DNA of 64,000 bases, from positions 67,828,001-67,892,000 of the forward strand of contig OZ241830.1 of assembly GCA_965202585.1 (NCBI GenBank), read 5' to 3'. Position numbers and translations under genes: made by a program. Of this stretch, positions 1-59,922 are shown in pieces (within the stretch, counting starts at the first letter, position 1; the number at the start of each line of letters is the position of its first letter). The notes beneath the pieces were generated by a model that did no database searches, was not told where the DNA came from, and was given only the letters and a program-made list of their open reading frames with translations. The stretch comes from Thalia democratica (lineage: Eukaryota).

Positions 1-3000
1 AGTAAATCTGGCCTGCTAAAATAGTTTATTGCATTTAAATTCTAAACAAACTTCATTAATTTTTCCTTTTATTTTGCTGCAATACGGTCAAATAGTTTTT
101 ATTACTTTGCTAAATAATGAAAAAAACGTTGTATTTCATAATTAATGTCCTTCACAAGATTTTAAAAAGTATCCGTGGTGTGTGACCCGATAACTAAAAG
201 GTTCTTTGTGAACCAGGTCCTAGCTCCGAATGTTTTGTGTGCTTTTTTGTCGTTAAATAAACAATATTAATAATAAGTTATGTAAAAAGTTATAAAAAGG
301 TCTTGTTGTATTTAGCTAAAACGACTTAAAGATGGTTAAGAAAAAGTTGTGTTGTAACTAGAATGAATTACAGACTAAGAACAGTTTTATGTTTAAAATT
401 GTCACGTTACTTCCAAACGCCTGCTGATCTGGATTTAACTTCTTGAAAAATGTCTTAGTAGTCCTTTGACATACTTTTCCTTAAAATTGTTCATATAAGG
501 GGAATTTACAAAAATTTAGCATTTTTTTAAATTTTAAACTTGTTAGTGCTGTAATTAAATGCTTTCTAAACAAATTTGTTATCTTAATTGGGTGAACAAT
601 GGTACAGCTAAATAAAATAACTAGGACAATATTAATTGCTGCAATTGTTAACAAAGTCTTGTAAAACTGAATTTAATAAATGTTACTTGATTCAAAATTT
701 TTTAGTAAGACAACTAACAAACAGTTTTAGTCACAAATAAGGTCAATGAATTCATGTGAATAAAAACCCTTTGGTCAATGAGCTACTCACAATTTTGCTT
801 CTTAACACTGTTTCGATATATTTTAATTGATAAGTAACAAAAGTAAAAAATAAATAAAAATCATGTATTTTTATGAACTAACAAAATTAAATTCAGATGA
901 TCCATACACTAATGTCAATAATGTTTGAAATAATATTTTTTGTGTTATTTAATTATTCATTTGTCTTAAAGTAATAAACATCAGGTTCTACCATAAACTG
1001 TTTTTTTTTTTCATTTGACCAAGTAAGACTGAACAAAGCATTTTAACACTTCTTTGTAAAAATGGTTCAAGTTTTAGTTAATTGTACATTCTTGAACTGA
1101 TTGTTTTTTATTTTCCTAACTAATGTTTTAAAATTTTAACAAATATCTGAAAAAGACACTATAAATTTTTATGTTAATGGTAAATTATCAGTGAAGTAAC
1201 AGTCAAACTTTTTGCAATAATAAGCATACTCTGGGCAAGAGTGAATGTGTTTCTTAATATGTTACTTGACCTGCCACATTAGTATGTTATTTTTAATTAT
1301 CTTAAAATAAAACATAAAACAATGTTTTAGTTTTCTTGGTGACAATGCTTTTGGAAAGTTTTCACAAGACTAAAATCTTAACACCATAAACCACAAAGTG
1401 TGGGAAAATCATGAAGCTTGAATCTCCAGACAAGTGTTCACTAGCACTACATCAAAAAATAACAATCCAACAAAACCCCAAATTTTGCCTTTTTAAGAAT
1501 AGGCCATAAACCAAATAATTTTAACAAAAACCATTCTTTTGTTTTAATTATTATTTAACATAAACAATTTTTTACTATAAAACAAGTTCAAATTTGGCAG
1601 AATTGTTTTTTGTACAGCCTTGAACCCATTTGTTGTCATTGTTCTAACTGTTTTAATAAAGTTTTACAATGGTCTGAACTTCAACTTTTTTAACATCATG
1701 TTTGTCCATCTGGTTTTGGCCCGTGGAAAAACAACTGGCACCACACCATCTTCTCTCTTCTACATCAACTTAAAGTATTTTTTGTGTTTAATTTTTTTTG
1801 CCCTTTCTACAATGTTATTTATGTATATGTTCTTAAAAATAAAAAATGTTTAAACTAGTTTTGTACTTGTTTAGTGTTTTTATTGATTTAATTCAGTCTT
1901 AATCAATAAACCTCACACTGGGTGTTAATACTTATTTAAGCATAGATGAATTTAAATCACAACTATTAATATAAAAAGTAAAAATAAGCATAATAAATTA
2001 ACAAAAATTACAAAGAAAAGTTAAAAGTTTAAGAAAAAACTCTATGAGTTGAACTTTAAAGGTTTAAAAGCTTCACACAACATTATTATGTACAATCAAC
2101 TAAGTAAAATAAAACTTTAGTAATCATAAAATTGGACTTATTAATTCAAAAAAATACTTAATCAAAAAAAAATTACTCAAATAATTTATAATGGGAACTA
2201 AGAGCATCTTAGTAAAAAGTTTCCCAGAAAAAAATGATCCTTTAAAACTTTTAACTATTATCACGTCGCAATTAAAGTTTTATTTGAAATCTATTTCAGC
2301 TAGGCAAAAACGAGCATTTTTTGTTCATAAAACTTATAATCTTTCAGTGTTAGAAGTTCAACATTCGTTATTCAAAGTTTATCAATTAACCAAAACAAAG
2401 TCAATAAAGTTTTTAATATTCTAATAATCTTTTTTTCTTTTTTTTTCAGGTGGTTCACAGGAAACAGCAAACCAGTTAAAACACGCCCCTGGTTTACAGG
2501 CTAAGTCGTGACTTTTATATATTTTTTAACATTTTAACTACTCAATTTGTTTGAATTTTTTGTGAAAAAATGTAGCTACATTTGATATTCTACAAGCCTT
2601 TTCTAGTTTTATTGGTCTGTTTTCTAAATAAAAAAATTTATTGGAACATTTCTTTTTTGTTTATTTAGATTTTAAGATTTAAGGTTTTTAACATTATTTA
2701 TTAGTTTTTTTGCACTTACTACATTGCCAAAAAAAAAAACTATGGTGGAAATTCAGTTTTCAACTAAAGGAAATTTTATTAAAATAATTTAAAAGATAAC
2801 TAAAAAACTAATAACTTATATTAAGTTATTTTAATCATTTATTATCAAAAATTAATTAGGAGTTTTCACAAGAAATATTGTGAAAATTAAGCATTATTAC
2901 AGAGTTCATATTTAATTGATGAGTTTATGTTAATGTTGATGAGTTTGTAAGTAAGTTAAAATGACTTTATTGAACAGCATTGTTTTTTAAGTGTTTTATA

Positions 3001-3022
3001 CATAAATACATTGAATAATATA

Positions 3023-5713
3023 TTGTAACAGGATATCAAACTGCATTTGGTATTTTTTTTATTTTGTTGGAAAGTATTGAGAACTCTTTTGCTCATCCAT
3101 GCGTTTAAGAGAAAGCTCGTAAGGTTACGTGTTTAACTGATGCAATTCTTCATTTGCATACTACAGCCATGTATAAACACTCATCAAGTGAAAGATATTT
3201 CATTCAAGCCAGGCCTTGCTGAAGTAAACATGTAATTCTAGTTAGACAATTGTGTTGGTTTATGAAAATTTTTATGTTTAAGAAGGATTTTTCTCATAAG
3301 TATTTTTATAGTTTTAAGTTCAAGCAGTTAATTTTTTTTTTTAATTTAAGCATTCTCAAAATATACCTTATTTAGATGTAAATTGTGTTTAAAAGTTTTA
3401 ATAAAACAATATCTTAAGCATATTGCTTTGAAATTTTACATGGTTCTTTGTAATTGTTAGTGTTTGCATTTGTTCTTAAATATAAAATATATTCATTTAT
3501 GACGTGCCTTGTTTTATATAGAGTAGCCCTACCCCTAAGTACTATCTAATATTAATATATATTAGTATAGAGTAGTTGGGTTAATGTTATTTATTTATTA
3601 GGGTTAATACTATTGACTTGTAACATACTATAACAATAAGTTTATTGATTATATAAACCACCTTATCTGTAAGTAACAATATACATTTTATTACTTTATT
3701 ATCTTTCAACTTACAAATCAAAATATCTAGAATTAAAGAAATAATAAATATGGGACAATATTATATATACTTATGTTTCATAACAAATACTCACTATACT
3801 TACCAGTTGAATTTTTTACCTTGATAGTGTTTATAACTGAACATATTTTTTGTAATGTGCAGGACGTAAGTTTAATGTGTGTGTATTAAACATTAAAAAC
3901 CTTAAGTAAAGTTCAATTTGATTTATTTTTTATTTCAATTAAAATACTCAACGCCAGCTTTAATTTTTAGGTATAAATCATAACTTATTTTTTTTTACAC
4001 TGACTTATTTTCTTAAATTACAAGAAAACAAAAGTTTAATCCTATAGGTTTTATAGAATTTTTTTTTTCAAGATTATAAAAAAACTTAAACTATATTAAC
4101 TTACTAAGATCACTTTTTTAGTTAGTTTAGATTGATAACTTATTAAACACACTTTTTGGCTTAAATACCTTTTTTTTTATAGTGCTAACTAGTAATAATT
4201 TTATTACCATCTACAAACTGAAGAAAAATATATTTTTTATAGTATGAAACTGTGCTAAAAATTTGTTTTAAAAAAGCTATTGAATAGTTTTATACTCTCG
4301 TTATGAATTTATTTTGAGCATATCTAACTTTTACCATTTACAAATATTAGAGAAATTTATTTTAACATATAGGCGATTAAAATTTAAAAGTTTGAAAATT
4401 TTTATTTTCAAGACAAAAATTTTTACTAAAATTATATCTCATCCTACACTTATTTACACGTTTTAGGAGGGTGATTAGACTAATTTCTTGAAGCCGGTGC
4501 GACCCCTAAAAAAAGGAAAACATTGTTTAACCAGAATCTTTAAAATTGTTTATTATTTTGTTGTATTAGTTTTTACTTAATTTTTGAATAATGAATGCTG
4601 GTTTACATTACGAAAGTATTAAAAGTAATTTTTTCTGTGTAAACTATCTGGCCCTAAACATCAGCTGAGAGAATTTTAGAGTTTCAAACACATTGTGATG
4701 ACACAGAGCATCAAAAGTTTATAGGATCCTTAACGTGTGCAAAACTTTTACGAATTTGCATAAAGTTTTCAACTTAAATGGCTACCATTAATAAATCAAG
4801 ATTATGCTTAGTTTTTGAACTAAATACAAAAAGTATTAGCTAAGTATTTATTATATAGCAATTACTGAGAATGATAAATTAAATTAACTTCCCGCACGTC
4901 TTTAAATTAATTATTTTCATACAAATATTCAATTTACATTTTCAAAGTTTTGGTTTTTATAGTTCACCAAAAACTAACCATGTCATTTTAGACACTAAAC
5001 GGCGATATTAAAATAATGACATTTTATCATTTTGTTTAAAATAGTATTTAACTAAAAATATGTTATGTTGCTTTGTCTTTAAAAAAGACTTTGTAACCTA
5101 TGGATGTAGGTACCTTAAATACACACTTAACCTACACTAAATATTGATACTAATAAAACTTGGGGCTACTCTATATAAAACTAGGCATGAAAATAAATGA
5201 ACATGTTGCATTAAAGAACAACTGCGAAAATTAATAAGAATATAAATAACATAATACTTTAGAAACTACTCTAAATGTATTCAAAACTTTACACACGAAT
5301 CAATCTAACAGGATTATACTTTTACAATGTATAAAACAAAATAAGATTCAACTACTTAAGACATTTAATATAAAAGTAACATTGTTAATCAATTACTTTA
5401 AATAGCACAAGAAAACAATATAAGTGTCTATTCAACATGAACAACATTTTTACTGCAGCAGGCTGTGGCTAGGACCCCTACTACTTTCTGTTGCTGGTTT
5501 ATATAGAAGCGTTCTTAGCTTTATGCAACATCACATCAGTAATTTGTTGTCTTCACTTTATTTTCTCCTTGTGTTAATTGTTTTAAACTGGCACTAGTAT
5601 AAAATTTGACCTTTCAAGCTTTCATTTAACCGATTGAATGAACAATGATACTAGCTCAAAACTTTCCATCAAGTCTAAACAGTAACCAAGTACAATCAAG
5701 TATCCTGTTACAA
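3023..5713. repeat. Old inverted duplication: ~550-600 bp arms (~3023-3580 and ~5110-5713) around a ~1.5 kb spacer, unit copy 1
   Basis: tgccttgttttatatagagtagccc (3505-3529) is the reverse complement of 5163-5187 at 24/25. Further matching anchors are ttgtaacaggata (3023-3035 vs 5701-5713) and a degenerate gcct(t)gctg[a/c]agtaaa motif on both arms. Confidence 0.8.
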
Positions 5714-6673
5714 CTTATAATACTAAATTCTAATAACAAAATAATTTGTATTTTTTAGGTAATTTCTAAGTTTTATTTCTAAAATTTGTCAAAAGAAAAT
5801 ACTTAAGTTTTAATTAAACTTATTGATAGAAATTGATTTTATTTGTAAAGGTAGTTTGGATTCAAGTTTTTGAAATAAAATAAAAACATTAAAATGTTTT
5901 AAAGTATTTATTGTTGTTTTTCAAAAAAAAATTTACAGGTTAAAAATCTTTCCGTTCAAAATAGGTGATTCAAATAAATGGTTCAACCGAATTACTTATA
6001 AGTTTAATAAATAGTATGTTAAGCTTTTTGTGAAACTAAACCTTATACTTGTTTTTCTAGAATACTACTGTAATCATATTTTCTTTGTGTTAACTGTCAT
6101 GGTCAATGCGGAAACTTCTATTTTTTCTAAGTACAATGTACACAATTAATAATAAATAAACATTAGACTATTTACCAACTTATTTCACTAAAAATTTTAT
6201 CTGGTAATACTTTAGTTTATACCTAGATGGTTTCTACTTCTTGTACAGGTTATTGTTTTTAAAGCAGAATTTTTAGTAAAACCATGAACAAACATTATCA
6301 AGTAAAAAAATAAAAAAACTTTTATTACAGATTAGGAAGGATAAAAAGATTTAATAACAGCTTGAAATTAAGTTTAAAAGTATAAGCTGGTTGATAGCTA
6401 TTGAATATTGCTAAAAAATATATACAAGAATGAACGATCATACTAGTTTAGTATTAACTTTTATAAATACATATATTTAATTTTGCTAAAATAAACTAAT
6501 GCTATAATAGATTAGTATGTATTTACTTCTTTTTCTAAAGTGTTTTGTTTAACGCTGTTGTAGTAAATACTATACGTTATAAAGAAAACTAATTTCTTAA
6601 AAATGCAGAAAGTAAACTATAATTTGATATTTAACGGTAAGATAATTAAACATATTTGTCATCATAAGAAAGC

Positions 6674-7983
6674 ATGGTTAAAAACATTTATCAAAAAGAT
6701 GTCCGTGCAAACTATCCTAAGTTAGTACAAAGCTCCCAAGTTGTCCACAAATTCGTAAAAATTACAAAGTAGATGAGTTTGCAAGGTTTGCAAAGAGAAT
6801 GCTCAAGGAAGTTTGATGACAACAAAATTAAATGACCTTTCAGAATCAGGTATTTGAAATGATTGTGTATATTATTTATTTTTTTTTTGGAAGCTCAGTC
6901 TAACCTCTAAACTAAACTTCATTTTTGACGTTATTAATTCGTTTTAAACGTTAAATTTAATGTACAAGTGTCAAATATTTATTTTTTTTCAAAGTTTGAT
7001 GTTGAAATAAATATGAAACGTTTTTAAAAAAAAGTTCAACAAGTTAAAAGAATTATAGAAATTATGTAAGTATTTATACAAAAAATTAAAAGTATAAACT
7101 ACTTGTAAAAGCATTTTTTCAAAACAATTTAACAGGCTTTACATTTGTATTTTATAACTAACTTTACTGCTCATAAAAATGTTTGTACAAATGTATACAC
7201 TTGAAGAAATAAACTTTTACAAGGAGATTGCTAGTGTTGTAATTGCTTTTTTTCTCTAATAACATTAAATATATTAACTTTTAAAAAAGATCAGAAAATA
7301 GAGATGAAACAAGTTAAAAATTTAATACAAGCTTAGTTTTATAAAACTTTTGTTTGATTACTTTTACAAAAAATTTATAAAAAAAAACCTTAATTATTAC
7401 AATAACTTATTCTAATAAGACTTTGTTTAAATTATTTCTTAACCGTTCTACTTTGAACTATTTTTCCAGTTACAATTAATTTTTTTTTTAATGTTTTATA
7501 TTAGAATGGTCACAGCTTTCTTCAACAGAATTTTATTTATAGGTAAACGCGAGTTTGAAAACGACGAATATCTCAAAGTTATAATTCAGAACAAGCTTTC
7601 ACTGAACGAGAACACAAATACGAGTTTGAAGAAATATATTGAAATCAAACTAACAACCAAAAAGTTGCTGCTTATTTTAAGATAAGCGAAATCTACTAGC
7701 TACTTGCAGTTAGATTACCACAGCTTGGCGAAAGTGGTGCGCAGTTCTAATGTAAACGCCACCTCGGAACTCGAAGTGTTATATGCAGCCACAGCTTGGT
7801 TGAGTAAAGATTTCAAAAAACGAAGCAAGTTTGCGAAAAGTCTTGATGCTTAAAATTCGTTTTGGCGTGCTGTCGGATCAAAGCTCAAAACGCATTTTGT
7901 CTAAAACACCAAAGTTAGCCGGAACGATCGGAGAAATATTAAAAGACGACTTTCTCAAAGAATTACTCAATTTATTTAGATAA
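6674..7983 (+). pseudogene. BACK-domain pseudogene, paralog of the Kelch gene, copy 1 (exons 6674-6849 and 7543-7983)
   Basis: Exon 2 translates across frameshifts to KVAAYFKISEIY..SYLQLDYHSLAKVVRSSNVNATSELEVLYAATAWLSKDFKKRSKFAKSLMLKIRF, which aligns with the BACK domain of the adjacent Kelch gene. The intron is phase 1 (TCAG|gtatt ... tttatag|GT). There are several frameshifts and stops. Confidence 0.85.
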
Positions 7984-10780
7984 TATAAGGTGCAGTAAGG
8001 CTTACAAATGTAGTTACAAATCTTCACAGTACTAAAAAAATATTTAACTTGAGACATTTGGTAGAGTAATTCAACTTTCTAGTTTTATTTTTATGTTAGT
8101 AAGTAATAAAGCATTTACATGTTATTGTTTGAAAAAGTAACTTATGAGATATCAGCAATCAAAGTTTGAAAGTGTTGTAAGTTTCTTAAATAGATCTAAG
8201 TATTTCACTAAAAAACTATCTACTTTTATACCTATTACGTATTGTTTTTAGAATATTCTTAGTTTAATTTAAAGTTTTACAAGATTGTTTTAATAGTTTT
8301 AGGGTTGCCAACAACTTAAGAAATGTAAGAAGTTCTAAAAAAATCTCAGAAAGACTCAGGCGAGTTTGGTATATAGTTATACAAGATGACTCAAGTACTT
8401 TATTTATAAAAACAATTTGGGAATATTTTAAAATTTCTACGATTTTCAATCAAATTCCATATTTTTTAGATGTTGAGTGAGATTAAGTAGTTGCAGTTTA
8501 AATATTTTGATTTTTTAATATTTTACAAACAGAATTATTCAAAAACCAAATTTTTTAGATTTAAAAAAAAATATTTAAATGTTGATTCTTTCTTAAAAAG
8601 TATTTAAATAAAAAACTCCAGAATATTCAATGCAAGGATAGGTTTTTTTGACTCAAAGAGACAATCCTACGATTGCTACTTGATAAAAATCAAAAAAGAA
8701 TTAGGCTACTTAGTTAGATCTTATTGGTTAAAGCATAAAAGTGAACAAAAAACTCATAACATACTCAATTCTGTATTTATAGTCTCAATCTTCTGAAATA
8801 TATAAAACACTTAAAAAATGTGAAACAATGAATTTTATATATTTACTCGTTAAAACAGACTAGAGTTATAATTTAAATAAATCTATTAGACTTAAAATGA
8901 AAAACAATAATACCAGTTAGGCTTTGCTTATCCAAGTCAATGAGAAAACCATAGTAAGTCAAAACAAATGGGTAGTAAAAATACTTACTAACAATTATAT
9001 AACTTTAACTTATAGAAATATACCCTCAAGTTTTATTTTAAGTATATGTTTTCTCGTCAACAACTTAATTGAAACTCAGGTGTAAAAATAGGTGATAGAA
9101 GAAGGGTCAGTTTAATTTTTTTAAGATTTTAGGAAAAAGATATCGATAAGTTGTTTTGCAAAAAAAAAATATAACGATTTATTAGTAGTCTCAACACGTT
9201 TAAAATAGTTTTTAAAGTATGAAATTAACGTTAAGTAAAAGATTTTGTAGTCCATCTTGAAACTTTTAGAAACTTGAATAAAAATGTTATATAACTTTTA
9301 GTTCTGGCTGCTAAACACTTATCAATTTACAATAAAATCTACTGCAAAATTTGAAAAGCAATAAGATAACTAAAAAATGAATAACAGTTGTCAAAGAGCA
9401 AGCACTCATCTTTACAAGCTAAGAAAAAGCATAATAAACACAGACTATTGTTTCACAAAACACAAAAAGACGTCGAAGAAATTTACAGAAAAATTCGCAA
9501 TTAGTAACTGTTAAACGACAAAACGCAGCAAGAAATCGGATCACAGGATTAACAACTTGAAAAAAAGTTATAATTACTGATGTTTAAACTCACTACCAAC
9601 TATATTTGAAGTAGGACATAATCAATTCATACTTATATTCACTTAAGACGAACACATTTTCGCAATTAACAATTTGTTGACAAAAGAAAAATTATCAAAC
9701 TAAAGCTATTTAGATATGAATTGAAAAATTTGACAGCTTTATATTAAAAGAAGCTAGATAGAAAATTTATTGCAGTACTTGTATGAATGATGAAGCAATG
9801 ACATCATAATGATTTACTTGATTTTTAGCCACGTCAATTGAGTAAGGATTTGCTTTTAAGCTAGCTCAATTGTCTAATTTGTAGGTACAACTACAGTTTG
9901 CAAGAAGATGAAATAAACTAACAACGATTAAAAAATACTCTATACTTTCTAAGTTAATACTTCTAAAATCTTAATTAGTTTGATTAGAAGTTGAAAACTT
10001 AACAATGAAATTAGAAAAATAAAAATTTCATGTTCTTTCGTATTATCTTGATTATGGTTATTTTCAACGATACAGATTTATTTTTACTATTTATGATTTC
10101 TCTTTTGATGTGCTACTTTTAATTGTTTTATCAAAGTAAAGTCTTTTAATAAATAAATTTAATCTAAAGTTTAAAATAATTTTTTTTCTTTTAAAGTAGA
10201 ACTAAAACAGTTTAGAAAAAACCAACTATTGGCTTAACTGTACTGAAAGTGGACTAAAATCTTAAAAATAATATCTTTTTATGCAATTTATAAAAAATTA
10301 TTTCAAAAAAATATTATCTAAGTATATATTGCGTTGTTTTGTTTTTTTGAATATCATATATATTTCTGCCGTTGAAGTTTAAGCATATTACAGCCTAAAA
10401 TATTTAACATAATTCAGTTAGATGTGTGTATTTAATTGGTTATTAAACTAAAATTGTCGTCAATCTTTTAACTTAATACTACTTTCTTACTAGTTAGTCA
10501 TGAAGTTACTCTAAAACTACAGTTGAAACTGTATTAAGATTTTGCATAAAACTTAGTTTTTTATTTTAAATTTTATGTTTTAAATTCCATATTTAAATTA
10601 AATAATTTTATTACACTCAAAAACAAAACACATTTATAACTCGTTCCATAAAACAAGTAAAAAATGTTATGACAAATTTATTTTTACTGTTAAAGTTATT
10701 ATGGATACATAAATCAGATGTTTATTATTATTTTAATGTTAAAAAAATAATTAATTTTATTTAGGTAGGTTTAACTTAAA

Positions 10781-12526
10781 ATGAGTTTTAAATTATCAAA
10801 AAATCGTAGAAAAAGCTTTAGTTTAGTTAAAGCATGCAAAAACAATGCTCGAAAGATAAATGAAAACAAAAATAGGATAAAAGTTTTTGAAACAGGTTTG
10901 TTTTTCGTTTTAAAATATGTATTTCCGAAGTATTTATTTATGAACCTTATGATTATTTTGTCAACTTTAGATTTGCTATTAAACCAAGTTACCTCCGGAT
11001 TTTTAGAAAAAAACACAATTTTTTTAAACACTTTAAATATTTTTTTTAATTGCTTCATAAATAACAAGTATTTAAAGTTAAGGTTTGAAAAAAAAGGTGT
11101 TAACTAATACTTTTAAAACATTTTTAGGTAGGAAAAAATCTAAAGAAGCAATGTTTGTATCGGCTTTTAAACTAAATAAACTTTTTCTACTAACAAACGT
11201 ACCAAAACTAAGCAGAAAAATCGAAGATAGTTTAACTGTTCAAAACGTATCCACATACTGCCAGATGTCATACATTTACAATCTAAACGTTCTATTTAAA
11301 AAAACGTTCAGCTTCATTGAACGTTGTTTTGTAGTGGTTGCTGAAACTAAAAACTTTTTAGAAATAGAAGATATTTTGATTGCAAGAATAATGGGTAGTT
11401 CTGGGTTAAAAATTACTTCAGAGTTAGAAGTTTTCAATGCTATAGATAGCTGGACTAGCTACAATACACAAAAAAGGAGCAAGCATGCAAAACATCTTTT
11501 TTTAAAGGTTCGGTTTCATCTTTTGCCCGATCGCACATTGAAACACGTTATTGATAAATCTTCATACTTTTCTAAAACTAAAGAACATGGTGCACTGTTC
11601 AATGCAGTTATGGGTAACAAAGAGAATTTTCCAAAAAAGTTGCTAAACAACTGCTACACCCATAGATATTGCGACCAACATGATTTTGATATAGTTATTT
11701 GTGGAGTTTTAGATGAACATTTAAAAAACTCAAACAAAGTGTTTCACAAAACAATAGAAAATGTGAAATTTATTACTCCAAAGAAACAAAAAGCAAATTT
11801 TAACCGAGTGGTTTGTTTGAAAGGAGAAATTTATGCAATAGCAGCAGGTAACTACATGTTTAAGGAAGACAAAACTACCATTGAAAAATACATTGCAAAA
11901 ACGAATACTTGGGAGAAAGTTTCACAAATAGACGACAACGGAGGACGAAGTTCATTTTGCTGCTGCGCTTTCATGAACGAAATATATATACTAGGCGGCT
12001 GTTACCGATGGTACGTGACTGACTCTTGCTTGAAGTTTGATGCAACAAGCCGCGCTTGGAAGGGAGTCACGGAGATGAGCGAAGCGCGCCAGCATGCGGC
12101 GTGCGCCGTTTTCCAAGGAAAAATCGTGGTTTGCGGCGGGGAAGATGAAGAAGATGAAAATTACTCGGAAACGGTTGAGTCGTATGACGTCATCACCGAC
12201 ACTTGGTCGCCGATGCCCAGCATGATGGAAAGCAAAAGCAGGCACAGCGCAGTTGCGGTGAGAAGCAAGTATTACGTCATCTGCGAAACGATTTTTGCGA
12301 GGTCTTTGACAGCGTTTGTAACAAGTTTGTTGCCTTAAAAGAACCGAATCTAAAGTTTAGACGAATGAGTAGAGCTGTTTCATTTGGCAGTAAAATTTTT
12401 GTGTTTCGTTTTACTCAACCTAGTTTGGTTGTTTATGATGTTGATAAAGACGAGTGGTCGGAGGAACTGTGTGAAATTACCAAAAATGTTCAATGCTTTT
12501 CCTGTACAGTTGTACCATTTTGTTAA
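10781..12526 (+). pseudogene. BACK-Kelch gene copy 1, frameshifted (exons 10781-10895 and 11128-12526)
   Basis: Nearly identical to intact copy 2. A 1-bp deletion at 12287/12288 (gaaacg vs gaacacg) splits the ORF into 11085-12338 and 12203-12526. It could be an assembly error. Confidence 0.8.
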
Positions 12527-12530
12527 TAAA
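12525..12530 (+). terminator. Polyadenylation signal AATAAA overlapping the Kelch stop codon (also in copies 2 and 3)
   Basis: The sequence tgtTAATAAAtttg follows the last codon in all three copies. AATAAA is common by chance in AT-rich DNA. Confidence 0.4.
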
Positions 12531-48949: not shown

Positions 48950-51612
48950 TTGTAACAGGATATCAAACTGCGTTTGGTATTTTTTTATTTTAATGGAAAG
49001 TATTGAGAACTCTCTTGCTCATCCATGCGTTTGAGAGAAAGCTCGTAAGGTCACGTGTTTTACTGATGCAATTATGCATTTGCATACTACAGCCATATAT
49101 AAATACTCAACAAGTGAAAGAGATTTCATTCAAGCCAGGCCTTGCTGCAGTAAACATGTAATTCTAGTTAGACAAATGTGTTGTTTTATGAAAATTTTTA
49201 TGTTTAAGAAGGATTTTTTCTCATAAGTATTTTTATAGTTTTAAGTTCAAGCAGTTAAATTTTTTTTAATTTAAACATTCTCAAAATATACCTTATTTAG
49301 ATGTAAATTGTGTTTAAAAGTTTTAATAAAATAATATCTTAAGCATATTGTTTTGAAATTTTACATGGTTCTTTGTAATTGTTAATGTTTGCATTTGTTC
49401 TTTGATATAAAATATTTTCATTTATGACGTGCCTTGTTTTATATAGAGTAGCTCTACCCCTAAGTACTATCTAATATTAGTATATATTAGTATAGAGTAG
49501 TTGGGTTAATGTTATTTATTTATTAGGGTTAATACTATTGACTTGTAACATACTATAACAATAAGTTTATTGATAAAATAAAGCACATTATCTGTAAGTA
49601 ACAATATACATTTTATTACTTTATTATCTTTCAACTTACAAATCAAAATATCTAGAATTAAAGAAATAATAAATATAGGACAATATTATATATACTTATG
49701 TTTCATAACAAATACTCACTATACTTACCAGTTGAATTTTTTACCTTGATAGTGTTTATAACTGAACATATTTTTTGTAATGTGCAGGACGTAAGTTTAA
49801 TGTATGTGTCTTAAACACTAAAAACCTTAAATAAAATTCAATTTGAATTATTTTTTATTTCAAACAAAATACTCAACGCCAGCTTTAATTTTTTGGTTTA
49901 AATCATAAATTATTTTTTTTACACTGACTTATTTTCTTAAATCACAAGAAAACAAAAGTTTAATCCTATAGGTTTTATAGAAATATTTTTTTTCAAGATT
50001 ATAAAAAACTTAAACTATAATAACTTACTAAGATCACTTTTTTAGTTAGTTTAGATTAATAATTTATTAATCACACATTTTGGCTTAAATACCCTTTTTT
50101 TATAGTACTAACTAGTAATAATTTTATTACCATCTACGAACTGAAGAAAAATATAATTTTTATAATATGAAATTGTGCTAAAATTTTTGTTTGAAAATAG
50201 CTATTGAATAGTTTTATACTCTCGTTATAAATTTATTTTGAGCATATCTAATTTTTACTATTTACAAATATTAGAGAAATTTATTTTAACATATAAGCGA
50301 TTAAAATTTAAAAGTTTGAAAAGTTTTTTTTTCAAGACAAAAATTTTCACTAAAATTATATCTCATCTTACACTTATTTACACGTTTTAGGGGGGTGATT
50401 AGACTGATTTCTTGAAGCCGGTGCGACCCCTAAATAAAAGGAAAACATTGTTTAACCAGAATCTTTAAAATTGTTTATTTTGTTGTATTAGTTTTTACTT
50501 AATTTTTGAATAATGAATGCTGATTTACATTTCGAAAGTATTAAGAGTCATTTGTTTCTGTGTAAACTAGCTGGCCCTAAACATCAGCTGAGAGAATTTT
50601 AGAGTTTCAAACACATTGTGATGACACAGAGCATCAAAAATTTATAGGATTCTTAACGTGTGCAAAACTTGTACGAATTTGCATAAAGTTTTCAACTTAA
50701 AATGCTACCATTAATAAATCAAGATTATGCTTAGTTTTTGAACTAAATACTACAAGTATTAGCTAAGTATTTATGTATTATATAGCAATTACTGACAATG
50801 ATAAATTAAATTAACTTCTGGCACGCATTTTCATACAAATATTCAATTTTACATTTTCAAAGTTTTGGTTTTTATAGTTTACCAAAAACTAACCATGTCA
50901 TTTTAGACACTAAACGTCGAAATTAAAATAATGACATTTTATCATTGAATTAGATTTAAATAAAAATATGTTATGTTGCTTTTTCTTTAAAAAAGACTTT
51001 GTAACCTATGGATGTAGGTACCTTAAATACACACTTAATCTATACTAAATATTTATACTAATAATACTTGGGGCTACTCTTTATAAAACTAGGCATGACA
51101 ATAAATGAACATGTTGCATTAAAGAACAATTGCGAAAACTAATAAGAATATAAATAACATCATACTTTAGAAACTACTTTAAATGTATTCAAAACTTTAC
51201 ACACGAATCAATCTAACAGGATTATACTTTAACAATGTATGAAACAAAATAAGATTCAACTACTTAGGACATTTAATATAAAAGTAACATTGTTAATCAA
51301 TTACTTTAAATAACACAAGAAAACAATATAAGTGTCTATTCATCATTTTTACTGCAGCAGGCTGTGGCTAGGACCCCTACTATTTTCTGTTGCTGGTTTA
51401 TATAGAAGCGTTCTTAGCTTTATGCAACATCACATCAGTAATTTATTGTCTTAACTTTATTTTCTCCTTGTGTTAATTGTTTTAAACTTGCACTAGTATA
51501 AAACTTGACCTTTCAAGCTTTTATTTAACGGCTTGAATGAACAATGATACTAGCTCAAAACTTTCCATCAAATCTAAACAGTAACCAAGTGCAATCAAGT
51601 ATCCTGTTACAA
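48950..51612. repeat. Nested inverted duplication, unit copy 3
   Basis: ttgtaacag at 48950-48958 and tatcctgttacaa at 51600-51612 are the outer anchors. The motif gcct(t)gctgcagtaaa is present on both arms. Confidence 0.78.
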
Positions 51613-52555
51613 CTTATAATACTAAATTCTAAATAATTTGTATTTTTTAGGTAATTTCTAAGTTTTATTTCTAAAATTTGTCAAAAGAAAATACTTAAGT
51701 TTTAATTGAACTTATTGATAGAAATTGATTTTATTTGTAAAGGTAGTTTAGATTCAAGTTTTTGAAATAAAATAAAAACATTAAAATATTTTCAAGTATT
51801 TATTGTTGTTTTTCAAAAAAAAATTTACAGGTTAAACATTTTTCCGTTCAAAATAGGTGATTCTAATAAATGGTTCAACCGAATTACTTCTAAGTTTAAT
51901 AAATAGTATGTTAAGCTTTTTGTGAAACTAAACCTTATACTTGTTTTTCTAGATTACTACTGTTATCATATTTTCTTTATGTTAACTGTCATGGTCAAAG
52001 CGGAAACTTCTATTTTTCTAAGTACAATGTACACAATTAATAATAAATCAACATAAGACTATTTACCAACTTATTTTACTGAAAATTCATCTGGTAGTAC
52101 TTTAGTTTATACCTAGATGGTTTCTACTTCTTGTACAGGTTATTGTTTTCAAAATAGAATTTTCAGTGAAACCATGAACAAACATTATCAAGTGAAAAAA
52201 TGAACAAATCTGTATTACAGATTAGCAAGGATATAAAGATTTAATAACAGCTAGTTTGAAAGTATAAGCTGGTTGATAGCTATTGAATATTGCTAAAAAA
52301 TATATACAAGAATGAACAATCATACTAGTTTAGTATTAACTTTTATAAATACATATATTTAATTTTGCTAAATAAAACAAATGCTATTATAACTTAATAT
52401 ATATTTACTTCTTTTTCTAAAGTGTTTTGTTTAACGCTGTTGTAGTAAATACTCTACGTTATAAAAAAAACTAATTTCTTAAAAATGCAGAAAGTAAACT
52501 ATAATTTAATATTTATCGGTAAGATAATAAAATAAATTTGTCATCACAAGAAAGC

Positions 52556-53869
52556 ATGCTTAAAAAATTTTATCAAAAAGATGTCTGTGCAAACTATCCT
52601 GAAGAAGTTAGTACGAAGCTCCCAAGTTGTCCACAAATTCGTAAAAATTACAAAGTTGATGAGTTTTGCAAGATTTGCAAAGAGAATGCTCAAGGAAGTT
52701 TGATGACAACAAAATTAAATGGAATTTCATACTCAGGTATTTGAAATGATTGTGTATATTATTTTTTTCTTTTTTGGAAGCTCAGTCTAACCTCTAAATT
52801 AAATTTCATTCTTGACGTTATTAATTTGTTTTAAACGTTAAATTTAATGTACAAGTGTCAAATATTTATTTTTTTTTAAAGTTTGATGTTGAAAAAAATA
52901 TTAAACGTTTTTAAAAAAAAGTTAAACAAGTTAAAAGAATTATAGAAATTCTGTAAGTATTTATACAAAAACTAAAAGTATAAACTACTTGTAAAAGCAT
53001 TTTTTTCATAACAATTTGAAAGGCTTTACATTTGTATTTTATAACTAACTTTACTGCTCATAAAAATGTTTGTGCAAACGTATACACTTGAATAAATAAA
53101 CTGTTTAAAGGAATTTTCTAGTGTTGTAATTGCTTTTTTTTATCTAATAACATTAAATATATTAACTTTTAAAAAAGGTCAGAAAATAGAGATGAAACAA
53201 GTTAAAAATTTAATACAAGCTTAGTTGTTAAAAACTATTGTTTGATTACTTTTACAAAAAATATATAAAAAAAAACTCATAATTACAATGACTTAATCTA
53301 ATAAGACTTTGTTTAAATTATTTCTTAATTGTTCTACTTTGAACTAAATTTTTCAGTTACAATTAATTTTTTTTTAAATGTTTTATATTAGAATGGTCAC
53401 AGCTTTCTTCAGCAGAATTTTCTTTATAGGTAAACGCGAGTTTAAAAACGACGATTATCTCAAAGTTATAAATCAGAACAAGCTTTCACTGAACGAGAAC
53501 ACAAATACGAGTTTGAAGAAACATATTGAAATCAAACTAACAACCAAAAATTTGCTGCTTATTTTAAGATAAGCGAAATCTACAAGCTATTTGCAGTTAG
53601 ATTACCACAGCTTGGCGAAAGTGGTGCGCAGTTCTAATGTAAACGCCACCTCGGAACTCGAAGTGTTCTAGGCAGCCACAACTTAATTGAGTAAAAATTT
53701 CAAAAAACGAAGCAAGTTTGCGAAAAGTCTGATGCTTAAAATTCGTTTTGGCGTGCTGTCGGATCAAAGCTCAAAACGCATTTTGTCTAAAACACCAAAG
53801 TTAGCTGGAACGATCGGAGAAATATTAAAAGACGACTTTCTCAAAGAATTACTCAGTTTATTTAGATAA
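52556..53869 (+). pseudogene. BACK-domain pseudogene, copy 3 (exons 52556-52736 and 53430-53869)
   Basis: Same structure as copies 1 and 2. It lacks their +1 T (reads KSLMLKIRF in frame) but shares the upstream frameshift and the internal deletion. Confidence 0.85.
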
Positions 53870-56734
53870 TATAAGGTGCAGTATACTTACAAATGTAGTT
53901 ACAAATCCTCACAGTACTAAAAAAATATTTAACTTGAGACATTAAGTACAGTAATTCAACTTTTTAGTCTTATTTTTATGTTAGGTAAGTAATAAAGCAT
54001 TTACATGTTATTGTTTGAAAAAGTAACTTATGAGATATCAGCAATCAAAGTTTGAAAGTGTTGTAAGTTTCTTAAATAGATCTAAGTATTTCACTAAAAA
54101 ACTATCTACTTTTATACCTATTAAGTATTGCTTTTAGAATATTCTTAGTTTAATCTAAAGTTTTACAAGACTATTTTAATAGTTTTAGGGTTGCCAACAA
54201 CTTAAGAAATGTAAGAAATTCTAAAAAATCTCAGAAAGACTCGAGCGAGTTTGGTATATTGTTATACAGGATGACTCAAGTACTTTATTTATAAAAACAA
54301 TTTGGGAATATTCTAAAATTTCTACAATTTTCAATCAAATTCCAGATTTTTTAGATGTTGAGTGAGATTAAGTAGTTGCAGTTTAAATATAAGTAAAAGA
54401 TTAAGTAGTTGCAGTTTAAATATTTTGATTTTTTAATATTTTACAAACAGAATTATTCAAAAACCAAATATTTTAGATTTAAAAAAAATATCTAAATGTT
54501 GATTCTTTCTTAAAAAGTATTTAAATAAAAAACTCCAGAATATTCAATGCAAGGATAGGTTTTTTGACTCAAAGAGACAATCCTACGATTGCTACTTGAT
54601 AAAAATCAAAAAAGAATTAGGCTACTTTGTTAGATCTTATTGGTAAAAGCATAAAAGTGAACAAAAAACTCATAACATACTCAATTCTGTATTTATAGTC
54701 TCAATCTTCTGAAATATATAAAATACTTAAAAAAATGTGAAACACTGAACTTTATATATTTACTCGTTAAAAACAGACTAGAGTTATAATTTAAATAAAT
54801 CTATTAGACTTAAATGAAAAACAATAATACCAGTTAGGGTTTGCTTATCCAAGTCATTGAGAAAACCAGTAGTAAGTCAAAACAAATGGGTATTAAAAAT
54901 ACTAACTAAAAATTATATAACTTTAACTTTTAGAAATATACCCTCAAGTTTTATTTTAAGTATATGTTTTCTCGTCAACAACTTAATTGAAATTCGGGTG
55001 TAAAAATTGTCAGCATCAGTAGACTTAAATTCTTAAATTGTTATAGAAGAAGGGTCATTTAAATTTTTTTAAGATTTTAGGAAAAAGATATCGATAAGTT
55101 GTTTTGCAAAAAAAAAATATATAACGATTTATTAGTAGTCTCAACACGTTTAAAATAGTTTTTAAAGTGTCAAATTAACGTTAAGTAAAAGATTTTGTAG
55201 TCCATCTTGAAACTTTTAGAAACTTGAATAAAAATGTTATATAACTTTTAGTTCTGGCTGCTAAACACTTATCAATTTACAATAAAATCTACTGCAAAAT
55301 TTGAAAAGCAATAACATAACTAAAAAATGAATAACAGTTGTCAAAGAACAAGCACTCATATTTACAAGCTAAGAAAAAGTATAATAAACACAGACTATTG
55401 TTTCACAAAACACAAAAAGACGTCGAAGAAATTCACAGAAAAATCCGCAATTAGTAACTGTTAAACGACAAAACGCAGTAAGAAATCGTATCACAGGATT
55501 AACAACTTGGAAAAAAGATATAATAACCGATGTTTATTTAAACTCACTACCAACTATATTTGAAGTAGGAAATAATCAATTTATACTTATATTCACTTAA
55601 GACGAACACATTTTCGCAATTAACAATTTGTTGACAAAAAAAAAAGATTATCAAACTGAAGCTATTTAGATATGAATTGAAAAATTTGACAGCTTTATAT
55701 TAAAAGAAGCTAGCGAGAAAATTTATTGCAGTACTTGTATGAATGATGAAGCAATGAAATCATAATGATTCAATTGATTTTTAGCCACGTCAATTGAATA
55801 AGAATTTGTTTTTAAGCTAGCTCAATTGTCTAATTTGTAGGTATAACTACAGTTTGTAAGTAGATGAAATAAACTAACAACGATTAAAAAATACTCTATA
55901 CTTTCTAAGTTAATACTTCTAAAATCTTTATTAGTTTGATTAGAAGTTAAAAACTTATCAATGAAATAAGAAAAATAAAATTTCATGTTCTTTCGTATTA
56001 TCTTGATTATGGTTATTTTCAACGATACAGATTTATTTTTACTATTTATGATTTTCTTTTGATGTGCTACTTTTAATTGTTTTATCAAAGTAAAGTCTTT
56101 TAATAAATAAATTTAATCTAAAGTTTAAAATATTTTTTTTTCTTTTAAAGTAGAACTATAACAGTTTAGAAAAACCAACTATTGGCTTAACTATACTGAA
56201 AGTGGACTAATATCTTAAAAATAATATCTTTTTATGCAATTTATAAAAAATTATTTCAAAAAAAAAACTATTTAAGTATATATTGCGTTGTTTTTTTTTT
56301 TAAATATCATATATATTTCTGCCGTTGAAGTTTAAGCATATTACAGCCTAAAATATTTAACATAATTCAGTTGGATGTGTGTATTTAATTGGTTATTAAA
56401 CTAAAGTTGATGTCAATCTTTTAACTTAATACTACTTTCATACTAGTTAGTCATGAAGTTACTCTAAAACTACAGTTGAAACTGAATTAAGATTTTGCAT
56501 AAAACTTACTTTTTTAATTTAAATTTTATGTTTTGAATTTCATATTTAAATTAAATAATTTTATTACACTCAAAAACAAAACACATTTATAACTCGTTCC
56601 ATAAAACAAGTAAAAAATGTTATGACAAATTTACTTTTACTGTTAAAGTTATTATGGATACATAAATCAGATATTTATTTTTATTTTAGAGTTAAAAAAA
56701 TAATTTATCTTTATTTAGGCAGGTTTAACTTAAA

Positions 56735-58471
56735 ATGAGTTTTAAATTATCAAAAAATCGTAGAAAAAGCTTTAGTTTAGTTAAAGCATGCAAAAACAAT
56801 GCTCGAAAGATGAATGAAAACAAAAATAGAATAAAAGTTTTTGAAACAGGTTTGATTTTCGTTTTAAAATATGCATTTCAGAAGTATTTATTTATAAACC
56901 TTATGATTATTTTGTCAACTTCAGATTTGCTATTAAACCAAGTTACCTCAGAATTTTTAGAAAAAACACAATTTGTTTAAACGCTTTAAACAATTTTTTA
57001 ATTGCTTCATAAATAACAAGTATATAGGAAATTAAAGTTAAGGTTTGAAAATAAAAGGTGTTAACTAATACTTTTAAAACATTTTTAGGTCGGAAAAAAT
57101 CTAAAGAAGCAATGTTTGTATCGGCTTTCAAACTAAATAAACTTTTTCTACTAACAAACGTACCAAAACTAAGCAGAAAAATCGAAGATAATTTAACTGT
57201 TCAAAACGTATCCACATACTGTCAGATGTCATACATTTACAATCTAAACGTTCTATTTAAAAAAATGTTCAGCTTCATTGAACGTTGTTTTGTAGTGGTT
57301 GCTGAAACTAAAAACTTTTTAGAAATAGAAGAAATTTTGATTGCAAGAATAATGGGTAGTTCTGGGTTAAAAATTACTTCAGAGTTAGAAGTTTTCAATG
57401 CTATAGATAGCTGGACTAGCTACAATACACAAAAAAGGAGCAAGCATGCAAAACATCTTTTTTTAAAGGTTCGGTTTCATCTTTTGCCCGATCGCGCATT
57501 GAAACACGTTATTGATAAATCTTTATACTTTTCTAAAACTAAAGAACATGGTGCACTGTTCAATGCAGTTATGGGTAACAAAGAGAATTTTCCAAAAAAG
57601 TTGGTAAACAACTGCTACACCCATAGATATTGCGACCAACATGATTTTGATATAGTTATTTGTGGAGTTTTAGATGAACATTTAAAAAACTCAAACAAAG
57701 TGTTTCACAAAACAATAGAAAATGTGAAATTTATTACTCCAAAGAAACAAAAAGCAAATTTTAACCGAGTGGTTTGTTTGAAAGGAGAAATTTATGCAAT
57801 AGCAGCAGGTAACTACATGTTTAAGGAAGACAAAACTACCATCGAAAAATACATTGCAAAAACGAACACTTGGGAGAAAGTTTCACAAATAGACGACAAC
57901 GGAGGACGAAGATCATTTTGCTGCTGCGCTTTCATGAACGAAATATATTTACGAGGCGGCCGTTACCGATGGTACGTGACCGACTCCTGCTTGAAGTTTG
58001 ATGCAACAAGCCGCGCTTGGAAGGGAGTCACCGAGATGAGCGAAGCGCGCCGTTTTCCAAGGAAGAATCGTGGTTTGCGGCGGGGAAGATGAAGAAGATG
58101 AAAATTACTCGGAAACGGTTGAGTCGTATGACGTCATCACCGACACTTGGTCGCCGATGCCCAGCATGATGGAAAGCAAAAGCAGGCACAGCGCAGTTGC
58201 GGTGAGAAGCAAGTATTACGTCATCTGCGAACACGATTTTTGCGAGGTCTTTGACAGCGTTTGTAACAAGTTTGTTGCCTTAAAAGAACCGAATCTAAAG
58301 TTTAGACGAATGAGTAAAGCTGTTTCATTTGGCAGTAAAATTTTTGTGTTTCGTTTTACTGAACCTAGTTTGGTTGTTTATGATGTTGATAAAGACGAGT
58401 GGTCGGAGGAACTGTGTGAAATTACCAAAAATGTTCAATGTTTTTCCTGTACAGTTGTACCATTTTGTTAA
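56735..58471 (+). pseudogene. BACK-Kelch gene copy 3, frameshifted (exons 56735-56849 and 57089-58471)
   Basis: A 17-bp deletion at 58051/58052 (agcatgcggcgtgcgcc lost) splits the ORF into 57058-58092 and 58070-58471. There is also an L-to-R change in the YLLGG Kelch motif. Confidence 0.88.
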
Positions 58472-59922
58472 TAAATTTGAAGAATTAATTGATTAGCTAA
58501 GTGCCAAATAATTGTATAAATTGTACAGAAATCTAAGACAAAATTCATTCAAAACATCTTTATTAAAGCAACAAACAAGTAAAATCGATTTCGGCTAACG
58601 CTTTTCAATTACTTTAGTTAGCAACTAATTTTAAGATTAAATTTTGAGTATATAAATAGTTAGAGGTTACATCAGAAAAATCAATTAACACTAATTAGCA
58701 TAATTGAGCAAAAATTAATTAAACATTCACAATTCATAAATGCATATACAAAACAGTTTATCAGTAATTTAACTAAGATAAGCAACATTAAAAATAAAAT
58801 AAAAATAAGCGACAAAATTCAAATAAAATCTATAACAACTTATAAAGATTAGATTTATAAACGTATTGTTGCTTACACAAATTAGGTTTACATGTTTTTA
58901 TAAATAGAGATTCTAAAACACTTAGGTGATAATCGTTACGAGCTTTTTTACTCTTTATTTTCGTAATCGTCTTTTTTTTTCAACTGACTAACAACGTACG
59001 ATTCATAGCAAAATGTTTTTATCATATTCGTTTAGATCAGAGTAGTACAAAGCTATATGCAATAAAGAAGTTTAATATGACTAACAATTTAATTTTGCAT
59101 AAAAACATGATAATTTATAAGATACATTTTGTAGTAGAAATCAATTTAGAACACTTATAAATTGAATCATTCAAGTTAACTTAAAGATCGAAAACAAGTT
59201 CAAACTCACTTAAGAACCAAAAATACCCTACAAACTTGTAACTTTTTAAAAAGGCTCTTACTAAACTATTATACAAAAACATTTATACTTTTGATAGCAG
59301 ATTGATAAAATAAAATTTAAAAGTTAAAAAAACTAACAAGATAAAGTTTCAAACTTTATAATACTAAACTTTTAAAATTTTTAATTATAATGTGTTCAAG
59401 GCTTGTAAATGCTTATATGTTATAAAAACCTACATTTTATGCAATAATGTAAAAAATAGTGTCTTATTTCTAGAAGTACAAATAGCATAAAGAAGAGTTA
59501 CTCATTATTTTAAATCATTACTGGTTTGTAATTAGTTTTATTGTTTGAGACAGCAAACGAAGGAGGAAAAATACAAATGTTTTTACTTCACACATTTTTA
59601 TCAGTTTAAATTTTTAGTATAAAAAAAACTAGGTATCACAAAATTACAATTTCCTAAAACTTCAATTTTCTAAACGAAACTTCCAATAAAGAAAATAATT
59701 TTTAAAATCAACACAATTATAAAAAAAAGTGTGAAAATCTTAAGAGCTCTTCTGCAAGCTTATCGAAGGAAAAAATTTAAAATAACCGAAGGTTTGTGCT
59801 TAATAAGAAAATTTTTCAAACGTCCTTGATAAAAGTAGGAATAAAATTCTACAAAAATTTACTAAAAAGGCATAAGCAGCGAAACAAACTAAAGCCGTCA
59901 ATTGAAATTGAGACGTGCAGCA

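What the first reader, a model, noticed from the sequence alone, without database searches (positions are those of the whole stretch)
1..58521. Tandemly amplified 23-kb cassette: BACK-Kelch + atypical kinase + PARP-like ART remnant + BACK paralog
Seen: one repeating unit holds four intron-poor, fast-diverged genes from substrate-adaptor (Kelch), phosphorylation and ADP-ribosylation families. It sits beside a conserved single-copy housekeeping gene, and the copies decay independently. Established: PARP-family ARTs and ubiquitin-ligase adaptor families are often expanded and fast-evolving in host defence, and amplified divergent kinases occur in drive systems such as mouse t-complex Smok. Inference: this may be an undescribed lineage-specific defence or selfish (toxin-antidote/drive) locus under birth-and-death turnover. 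Caveat: the ART and BACK paralog were already dead before these copies split, so they may be passengers of Kelch or kinase amplification.
Basis: partly seen in the sequence, partly recalled or inferred. Interest (0 to 1): 0.75.

Follow-up and report, generated by a model that had tools for sequence, protein, structure and literature searches.

The report
Decaying tandem Kelch–kinase duplication array
The 23-kb repeat is real, but it is one slice of a half-megabase patch of messy segmental duplication in which only a Kelch gene and a small kinase gene were ever functional, most copies in this window are already broken, and nothing points to a defence or gene-drive device.

Summary
The 23-kb tandem repeat is real: 2.5 units in the window, 93-95% identical. 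All four listed elements are present. Only two are genes: a BTB-less BACK-Kelch gene and, tail-to-tail 1.6 kb away, an intronless 323-aa CMGC kinase. The PARP-like and second BACK pieces are old relics whose stops are shared between copies, so they are passengers.

In the window only the unit B Kelch is intact. Both kinase copies are dead; unit B keeps a 316-aa ORF but has a stop at codon 22 plus a 4-bp insertion.

The array is larger than reported. The unit recurs in three blocks, one inverted, across about 0.5 Mb. The Kelch gene is also amplified without the kinase.

The "single-copy housekeeping" neighbour (GTF3C3) is not single-copy. Its last exon occurs 18 times in the genome, 13 of them in this region.

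New here: an old paralogous Kelch-kinase pair in the same arrangement lies on another contig (C2). Linkage of these two genes therefore predates the array.

dN/dS of 0.2-0.5 shows past constraint on both genes. No evidence supports defence or drive.

The scan has already described this giant BTB-less Kelch family, and similar arrays with decaying neighbour genes, on other pieces of this genome. Verdict: ordinary birth-and-death duplication.

The parts
1..22860 (+). Repeat unit A. Both of its genes are broken.
   Evidence: Self-BLAST gives 94.7% identity to unit B over 1-8892 and 95.0% over 8620-20383.
22861..45933 (+). Repeat unit B. Its Kelch is intact and its kinase is disabled near the start. 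It carries a 270-bp internal tandem duplication at 31465-32003.
45934..58521 (+). Repeat unit C, partial. It ends about 50 bp past the Kelch stop, at unit position 12855. The left block and the 33.6-kb array show the same breakpoint.
7686..7844 (+). BACK-domain relic in unit A. The same relic lies at 30534-30692 in B and at 53573-53854 in C, where it has 2 stops.
   Evidence: tblastn shows 38-43% identity to Kelch B residues 82-134/183. Pfam BACK gives E 3e-8 and 8e-9. One search reports the stops in the C copy.
11097..12526 (+). BACK-Kelch gene, copy A. A 1-bp deletion after position 12287 (codon about 400) shifts the frame.
34235..35665 (+). BACK-Kelch gene, copy B. It is the only intact gene in the window. 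The open frame is 476 codons, the first ATG is at 34289, there is no BTB domain, and BACK spans residues 54-152 followed by the Kelch repeats.
   Evidence: Pfam. All 120 listed relatives have BACK and Kelch but no BTB. N-terminus examined.
57058..58471 (+). BACK-Kelch gene, copy C. A 17-bp deletion after position 58046 (codon about 331) shifts the frame.
14091..15061 (-). CMGC kinase gene, copy A. It is a pseudogene, with a 1-bp deletion in the catalytic loop near 14618 and TAA stops near 14376 and 14221.
37233..38208 (-). CMGC kinase gene, copy B. The native ATG is at 38206-38208. A TAA lies at codon 22 (38140-38142), followed by a 4-bp insertion. The 316-aa ORF at 37233-38183 has therefore lost its start.
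   Evidence: Alignment with the intact copies L and R. Coordinates.
20479..21035 (+). PARP-like ADP-ribosyltransferase relic in unit A. The unit B copy lies at 43548-44099. Several stops are shared by both copies.
   Evidence: Six-frame reading. Pfam PARP gives 17.4 bits, below the cut-off. The relic is 64-76% identical to intact PARP-like ORFs of this genome (one search compared).
58522..64000 (-). Right flank holding the 3' exons of a GTF3C3 (TFIIIC subunit 3) gene. The last exon is at 59923-60186. This flank is itself multi-copy.
   Evidence: The last exon matches human GTF3C3 residues 806-882 with E 1e-19. The flank recurs at 94-95% identity. There are 18 copies of the last exon in the genome.

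Best explanation
The window is a slice of a roughly 0.5-Mb region (G000 contig C6, about 67.48-67.99 Mb) of recent, repeated segmental duplication. The duplication is most likely driven by unequal or non-allelic homologous recombination, with gene conversion between copies, and is followed by independent decay of copies.

The only real genes of the 23-kb unit are a convergent pair. One is a BTB-less BACK-Kelch gene from a family with thousands of hits in this genome. The other is an intronless, lineage-restricted 323-aa CMGC kinase, nearest to CDKL/DYRK, with an intact catalytic core but a glycine-poor ATP loop. The PARP-like and BACK pieces are older pseudogene debris that was copied along.

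Duplication breakpoints ignore gene boundaries. Examples are mid-Kelch breaks, a break just after Kelch, and a break that carries the neighbouring GTF3C3 gene along. The Kelch gene is copied far more often than the kinase. The array is therefore structural birth-and-death turnover, not a selected multi-gene device.

Shown: the anatomy, copy states, past purifying selection and the old Kelch-kinase linkage. Inferred: the recombination mechanism, and that the amplification itself is largely neutral.
For: - Repeat structure.
- Wider map: the unit recurs at C6:67481684-67515112 (+), 67817028-67828000 (+, starting at Kelch residue 232) and 67955597-67992111 (-). A 33.58-kb-period array between them shares only unit positions 10292-12855, the Kelch gene.
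- Copy counts: about 25 full or partial Kelch copies of this subfamily, 5 kinase copies and 18 copies of the GTF3C3 last exon.
- Copy states: the kinase is intact at three places (open frames of 326 codons). It is broken in A and B. Kelch is intact in B, L1, R and C45. It is frameshifted in A, C, L2 and the 33.6-kb array.
- Constraint: Nei-Gojobori dN/dS is 0.25-0.38 for the kinase and 0.2-0.5 for Kelch among full-length copies. It is 0.29-0.53 among the copies without a frameshift. Fisher tests give p 0.0006-0.03.
- Gene conversion: B and the copy 340 kb to its left are 99-99.7% identical over about 4 kb around Kelch, against about 95% in the flanks.
- Relics: stops in the ART relic are shared by copies. 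No ART relic lies at the paralogous C2 locus.
- Genome background: 5850 first-look Kelch candidates and 851 PARP candidates in 801.8 Mb.
Against: - The Kelch-kinase adjacency is older than the array. A paralogous pair with the same tail-to-tail layout lies on C2, and the two Kelch genes form a clade with SH-like support of 100. This leaves room for functional coupling.
- A relative carries at least 10 distinct intact variants of the same kinase, 95-99% identical to each other. Repeated amplification of the kinase could therefore be selected.
- The neutrality of the amplification is inferred, not measured.
- Expression, read depth and population copy number could not be examined.
Confidence: 0.75

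Rival explanations
1. The convergent Kelch-kinase pair is a functionally coupled two-gene module. For example, the propeller may bind, present or regulate the kinase or its substrate. Its copy number would then be under adaptive or selfish selection, as in defence, toxin-antidote or drive systems.
For: - A paralogous pair in the same orientation lies on C2, with about 46% (Kelch) and 43% (kinase) amino-acid identity.
- ((Kelch B, P0024), (C2 Kelch, P0025)) has SH-like support of 100 among 122 family members, so the pair duplicated as a unit before the split from the relative.
- Both genes show dN/dS well below 1.
- The kinase is multi-copy in a relative too.
Against: - Kelch is amplified at least 13 times next to a GTF3C3 fragment without the kinase, so there is no stoichiometric coupling.
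- The C2 pair is itself broken: the kinase has a TAG and the Kelch has 2 frameshifts.
- Neighbours copied together stay neighbours by default.
- No C2-type kinase was found in the relative.
- No expression, interaction or phenotype data exist.
Confidence: 0.13
2. The array is wholly or partly an assembly artefact, with divergent haplotypes or collapsed and expanded repeats laid out in tandem.
For: - Unplaced contigs C45, C1025, C1183, C1184 and C511 carry the same Kelch and/or GTF3C3 pieces.
- Kelch copies in the 33.58-kb array are identical to each other, as over-expanded repeats would be.
- Read depth could not be checked.
Against: - There are more than two units in a row plus separate direct and inverted blocks on the same contig.
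- Units differ by 5-7%, with private indels, private disabling lesions and different breakpoints.
- A gene-conversion tract is confined to about 4 kb.
- The contig is 81 Mb long, and no N runs occur in the window or in the fetched C6 flanks.
Confidence: 0.07
3. All four elements, including the PARP-like ART, form one working cassette.
For: The four elements are co-duplicated in every complete unit.
Against: - The ART relic has several in-frame stops shared between copies and scores below the Pfam cut-off.
- The BACK relic is a fragment of 53-102 residues.
- The ART relic is absent from the older C2 pair.
- A random 23-kb segment of this genome has about a 2% chance of holding a PARP candidate and about a 15% chance of holding a Kelch candidate.
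Confidence: 0.02

Closest known systems
BTB-BACK-Kelch (KLHL/KBTBD) Cul3 substrate adaptors
   Same: There is a BACK domain followed by Kelch repeats. The nearest named Atlas clusters are animal KLHL and KBTBD proteins, with scores of 0.91-0.94.
   Different: No BTB domain is present in this protein or in any of the 120 listed relatives. Only about 35 residues precede BACK. Canonical Cul3 recruitment therefore cannot be assumed. The gene is a single exon of about 475 codons and belongs to a family with thousands of candidate hits in this genome.
CMGC kinases of the CDKL and DYRK type
   Same: The best solved relatives are CDKL5 (E 2e-29), DYRK2, p38, FUS3 and CLK4. The VAIK lysine, the alpha-C glutamate, H-x-D, the catalytic-loop asparagine, the D of DFG (here DLG) and the PE motif are all conserved across 17 sequences.
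   Different: The ATP-binding glycine loop has lost its glycines (QSGVAK here, SSSVAM in the relative). The protein is a bare 323-aa kinase domain and the gene has no introns. Outside one related organism (62-67% identity) the nearest hits are at most 27-33% identical.
Mouse t-complex Smok and other amplified kinase drive loci
   Same: A divergent kinase is present in several tandem copies.
   Different: No responder or distorter structure, no germline expression data and no transmission data exist here. Two of the 5 kinase copies are dead. The resemblance rests on copy number alone.
Other tandem arrays in this same genome with a Kelch gene plus a decaying neighbour (earlier scan notes s1-311146 and s1-311274)
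   Same: A Kelch gene from the giant BTB-less family multiplies in 15-30-kb units together with whatever lies beside it, and the neighbour decays.
   Different: Here the neighbour kinase keeps three intact copies, shows purifying selection, and has an older paralogous pairing with Kelch on another contig.

Membership tests
BTB-BACK-Kelch Cul3 adaptors | N-terminal BTB/POZ domain that binds Cul3 | tested here: not met
   Pfam finds BACK at residues 54-152 and Kelch repeats but no PF00651. None of the 120 relatives carries BTB. The frame upstream of 34235 is closed.
BTB-BACK-Kelch Cul3 adaptors | BACK domain followed by a Kelch beta-propeller | tested here: met
   BACK E 8e-20. Kelch_1 E 4e-18. 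Propeller-level models cover residues 249-457.
Eukaryotic protein kinases, CMGC group | Catalytic core residues: VAIK Lys, alpha-C Glu, HxD Asp, catalytic Asn, DFG Asp and APE Glu | tested here: met
   K60, E72, H146/D148, N153, D171 and E199 are invariant in alignment A2. Pkinase E 6e-40. The best solved matches are CMGC kinases.
Eukaryotic protein kinases, CMGC group | Glycine-rich GxGxxG ATP loop | tested here: not met
   The loop reads QSGVAK in this genome and SSSVAM in the relative, against GEGAYG in CDKL5. Activity is therefore plausible but unproven.
PARP-type ADP-ribosyltransferases | Open catalytic domain that passes the family model | tested here: not met
   The best piece scores 17.4 bits against a cut-off of 26.7. 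Stops interrupt the domain in both copies, and several are shared. Homology to the genome's PARP-like family is nevertheless clear, at 64-76% identity over 42-47 residues.
Toxin-antidote or meiotic-drive locus | Two components that are always co-inherited and co-amplified | tested here: not met
   There are 5 kinase copies against about 25 Kelch copies. At least 13 Kelch copies are joined to a GTF3C3 fragment instead of the kinase.
Toxin-antidote or meiotic-drive locus | Transmission distortion, or a killing and rescue activity | not testable with these tools
   This needs crosses or expression assays.
Birth-and-death tandem gene family (segmental duplication) | Several paralogous units with independent pseudogenisation and variable breakpoints | tested here: met

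The most novel reading that the evidence does not exclude
The BTB-less Kelch gene and the glycine-loop-less CMGC kinase form an old, lineage-specific two-gene module. The module has been kept tail-to-tail through at least one ancient duplication and is repeatedly amplified in two related species. Its copy number would be selected in a host-parasite or intragenomic conflict.
Probability: 0.1. Interest if true: 0.6.

Novelty: new member of a known kind. Interest (0 to 1): 0.3.

Why it matters
The result mostly clears away a tempting story. The PARP and BACK pieces are junk, the window's kinases are dead, and the 'housekeeping anchor' is itself amplified.

Three things remain of modest value. The first is a well-mapped example of how a giant Kelch family spreads by dragging neighbouring genes along. 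The second is an uncharacterised kinase subfamily with a conserved catalytic core and a degenerate ATP loop, kept beside a Kelch gene at two old loci. The third is an unexpected multi-copy state of a TFIIIC subunit gene.

Tried and rejected
The contigs of the relative's Kelch (P0024, P0025) and kinases (P0001-P0010) could not be read, so synteny in the relative is untested.
C6:67.68-67.828 Mb and 67.892-67.942 Mb were mapped only from search coordinates.
- Complex prediction on Kelch and kinase gave no verdict (score 0.00, below the mark). It is not evidence either way.
- A word search with the C-terminal piece of the C2 kinase found no C2-type orthologue in the relative.
- Two literature searches for Kelch expansions in tunicates or salps found nothing relevant.
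- Rfam, tRNA and tandem-repeat scans of the window were empty.
- An attempt to show that the duplicated GTF3C3 copies are full length was inconclusive. Upstream ORFs matched only generic TPR proteins or nothing.
- A first IQ-TREE run timed out, and FastTree was used instead.
- For that tree the broken C2 Kelch was read through its two frameshifts with X at each break, inside the script only.
- The large representative search was not run, because no claim here rests on absence of relatives.
Full report
**Observation**

The window is AT-rich (about 26% G+C) and has no N runs. Self-comparison shows a direct repeat with a period of 22.8-23.1 kb. Unit A is 1-22860, unit B is 22861-45933, and unit C is 45934-58521 and partial. 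Long HSPs are 92.8-95.5% identical. This is far beyond chance.

- A short BACK relic lies at 7686-7844, 30534-30692 and 53573-53854. Pfam BACK gives E 8e-9 and 3e-8, and the relic is about 40% identical to the main Kelch.
- A BACK-Kelch gene lies on the + strand.
- A protein-kinase gene lies on the - strand, 1.6 kb downstream and tail-to-tail.
- A PARP-like relic lies at about 20479-21035 and 43548-44099.

The PARP-like relic scores under the Pfam cut-off, at 17.4 against 26.7 bits. Its best piece is nevertheless 64-76% identical to intact about-230-275-aa ORFs elsewhere in the genome that pass the PARP model. It is therefore a true decayed family member.

**State of the genes in the window**

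Kelch:
- B has an open frame of 476 codons.
- A has a 1-bp deletion after position 12287.
- C has a 17-bp deletion after position 58046.

Kinase:
- Alignment with the intact copies elsewhere shows that the true gene is 323 codons from an ATG. This is the same length as the relative's proteins.
- Copy A has a 1-bp deletion in the catalytic loop and two TAA stops.
- Copy B keeps a 316-codon ORF. However, it has a TAA at codon 22 and a 4-bp insertion just after it, so the ORF is cut off from its start.
- No kinase in the window is therefore intact.

**What the two genes are**

The Kelch protein has BACK (residues 54-152) and Kelch repeats but no BTB domain. None of its 120 listed relatives has one either. 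The genome gives 5850 first-look candidates for it and many full-length single-exon paralogues at 37-44% identity. Earlier scan notes describe the same giant BTB-less family on other pieces of this genome and call the organism a probable pelagic tunicate. I did not verify the organism. I saw only that the nearest named clusters are animal KLHL proteins and that the flank gene resembles human GTF3C3.

The kinase is a CMGC kinase. Its best solved relatives are CDKL5 (E 2e-29), then DYRK2, p38 and CLK4. All catalytic residues are conserved, but the glycine loop has lost its glycines. Outside this genome it has 62-67% identical, 323-aa relatives in one related source. There are at least 10 such variants, 95-99% identical to each other. 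Beyond those, nothing exceeds about 27-33% identity.

**The wider locus**

The window is G000:C6:67828001-67892000. The 23-kb unit also occurs in three other places.
- Directly left of the window, at 67817028-67828000. This is a partial unit that starts at Kelch residue 232 and has an intact kinase.
- As about 1.5 units at 67481684-67515112.
- As an inverted block at 67955597-67992111.

Between these lies a 33.58-kb-period array (five periods fetched). It shares only the Kelch gene with the unit (unit positions 10292-12855) and adds a truncated second Kelch copy.

In total:
- About 25 full or partial Kelch copies of this subfamily lie between 67.49 and 67.97 Mb. More lie on unplaced contigs.
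- There are only 5 kinase copies, of which 3 are intact.

The unit's right-hand breakpoint in the window (unit position 12855, about 50 bp past the Kelch stop) is reused in the left block and throughout the 33.6-kb array.

**The neighbour is not single-copy**

Window 58400-64000 carries the last exons of GTF3C3. The last exon matches human residues 806-882 with E 1e-19. The whole stretch recurs at 94-95% identity after each Kelch of the 33.6-kb array. The last exon is present 18 times in the genome. Thirteen of these are in this region, and all 18 have an open frame. Whether the copies are full length could not be settled. It also shows that duplication here copies whatever lies next to Kelch.

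**Selection and conversion**

- Nei-Gojobori estimates among kinase copies give dS 0.07-0.11 and dN/dS 0.25-0.38.
- Among full-length Kelch copies they give dS 0.02-0.05 and dN/dS 0.2-0.5. Among the four copies without a frameshift (B, L1, R, C45) the range is 0.25-0.53.
- Synonymous changes are in significant excess, with Fisher p from 0.0006 to 0.03.
- Both genes were therefore under constraint for much of the time since the copies split, and the lesions in A, B and C are recent.
- Unit B and the copy 340 kb to its left are 99-99.7% identical over about 4 kb around Kelch, against about 95% in the flanks. This points to gene conversion or very recent copying.

**An older linkage**

Contig C2 carries a Kelch gene (+) and, 2.4 kb downstream, a kinase gene (-) in the same tail-to-tail layout. 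They are about 46% and 43% identical to the array genes. Both are broken, by two frameshifts and one TAG respectively.

The C2 Kelch has its own 73% orthologue (P0025) in the relative, and the array Kelch has a 71% orthologue (P0024). In a FastTree of 122 family members the four form one clade, with SH-like support of 100. The pair was therefore duplicated as a unit before the two organisms split, and both loci have kept the adjacency.

This is the one result that favours some coupling of the two genes. It is weak evidence, because co-duplicated neighbours stay adjacent by default. No PARP relic lies at the C2 locus.

**Interpretation**

The best reading is ordinary birth-and-death segmental duplication around a member of a hyper-expanding Kelch family. 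Neighbouring sequence is dragged along: a kinase gene, old PARP and BACK debris, and a GTF3C3 gene.

Nothing supports a four-part cassette, and the Kelch protein cannot be assumed to be a Cul3 adaptor. A defence or drive role is neither supported nor excluded, because expression, depth, synteny in the relative and phenotype could not be tested. An interaction prediction for Kelch and kinase returned no verdict and is not used as evidence.

An assembly artefact is unlikely, given private lesions, differing breakpoints and direct plus inverted blocks on one 81-Mb contig. The exact copy number remains unverified.

**Verdict**

The feature is real, and its anatomy was largely well seen. It was over-interpreted. 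It is a new member of a known kind, a lineage-specific tandem duplication array, of low to moderate interest.

Noticed in passing
window 58400-64000; C6:67.51-67.94 Mb; C6:34770094; contigs C45, C511, C1025, C1183, C1184: The GTF3C3 (TFIIIC subunit 3) gene region is multi-copy. The last exon occurs 18 times with open frames at 95-100% amino-acid identity, usually about 2.2 kb downstream of a Kelch copy. Whether any or all copies are full length is unresolved.
   Followed up: partly
L029 (G000:C2:71906001-71916000): Kelch 1294-2691 (+), kinase 5096-6010 (-): An old paralogous Kelch-kinase pair sits in the same tail-to-tail layout, and both genes are broken. The Kelch has a 73% orthologue (P0025) in the relative.
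   Followed up: yes
C6:67513633-67649423 (L004-L017): A 33.58-kb-period array of at least five units was fetched. Each unit has one near-full Kelch with a shared 1-bp deletion at codon about 457, one Kelch cut at residue about 350, and a GTF3C3 fragment. The Kelch copies of two units compared here (P1 and P4) are identical to each other, with 0 differences, which means very recent amplification or assembly over-expansion.
   Followed up: partly
window 32861-36860 versus C6:67485848-67493351: A tract of about 4 kb around the Kelch gene is 99-99.7% identical between copies 340 kb apart, while the flanks are about 95% identical. This is a probable gene-conversion tract.
   Followed up: partly
window 34175-34300: Where the relative's Kelch protein starts with Met-Lys-Ile-Lys, this genome has TTG and an extra base. 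The first in-frame ATG is therefore at 34289. A pyrimidine-rich stretch ending in AG at about 34265 could be a splice acceptor for an upstream exon, as an earlier scan note proposed for this family.
   Followed up: no
G000:C5:6.89-7.72 Mb and C281: Dozens of short kinase-like open frames (121-200 codons, 30-44% identical to the kinase N-lobe) recur at spacings of about 15-22 kb. This looks like another large tandem array, this time of truncated kinase genes.
   Followed up: no
window 31465-32003: A 270-bp internal tandem duplication is present in unit B, while units A and C each carry a single copy at the corresponding position.
   Followed up: no
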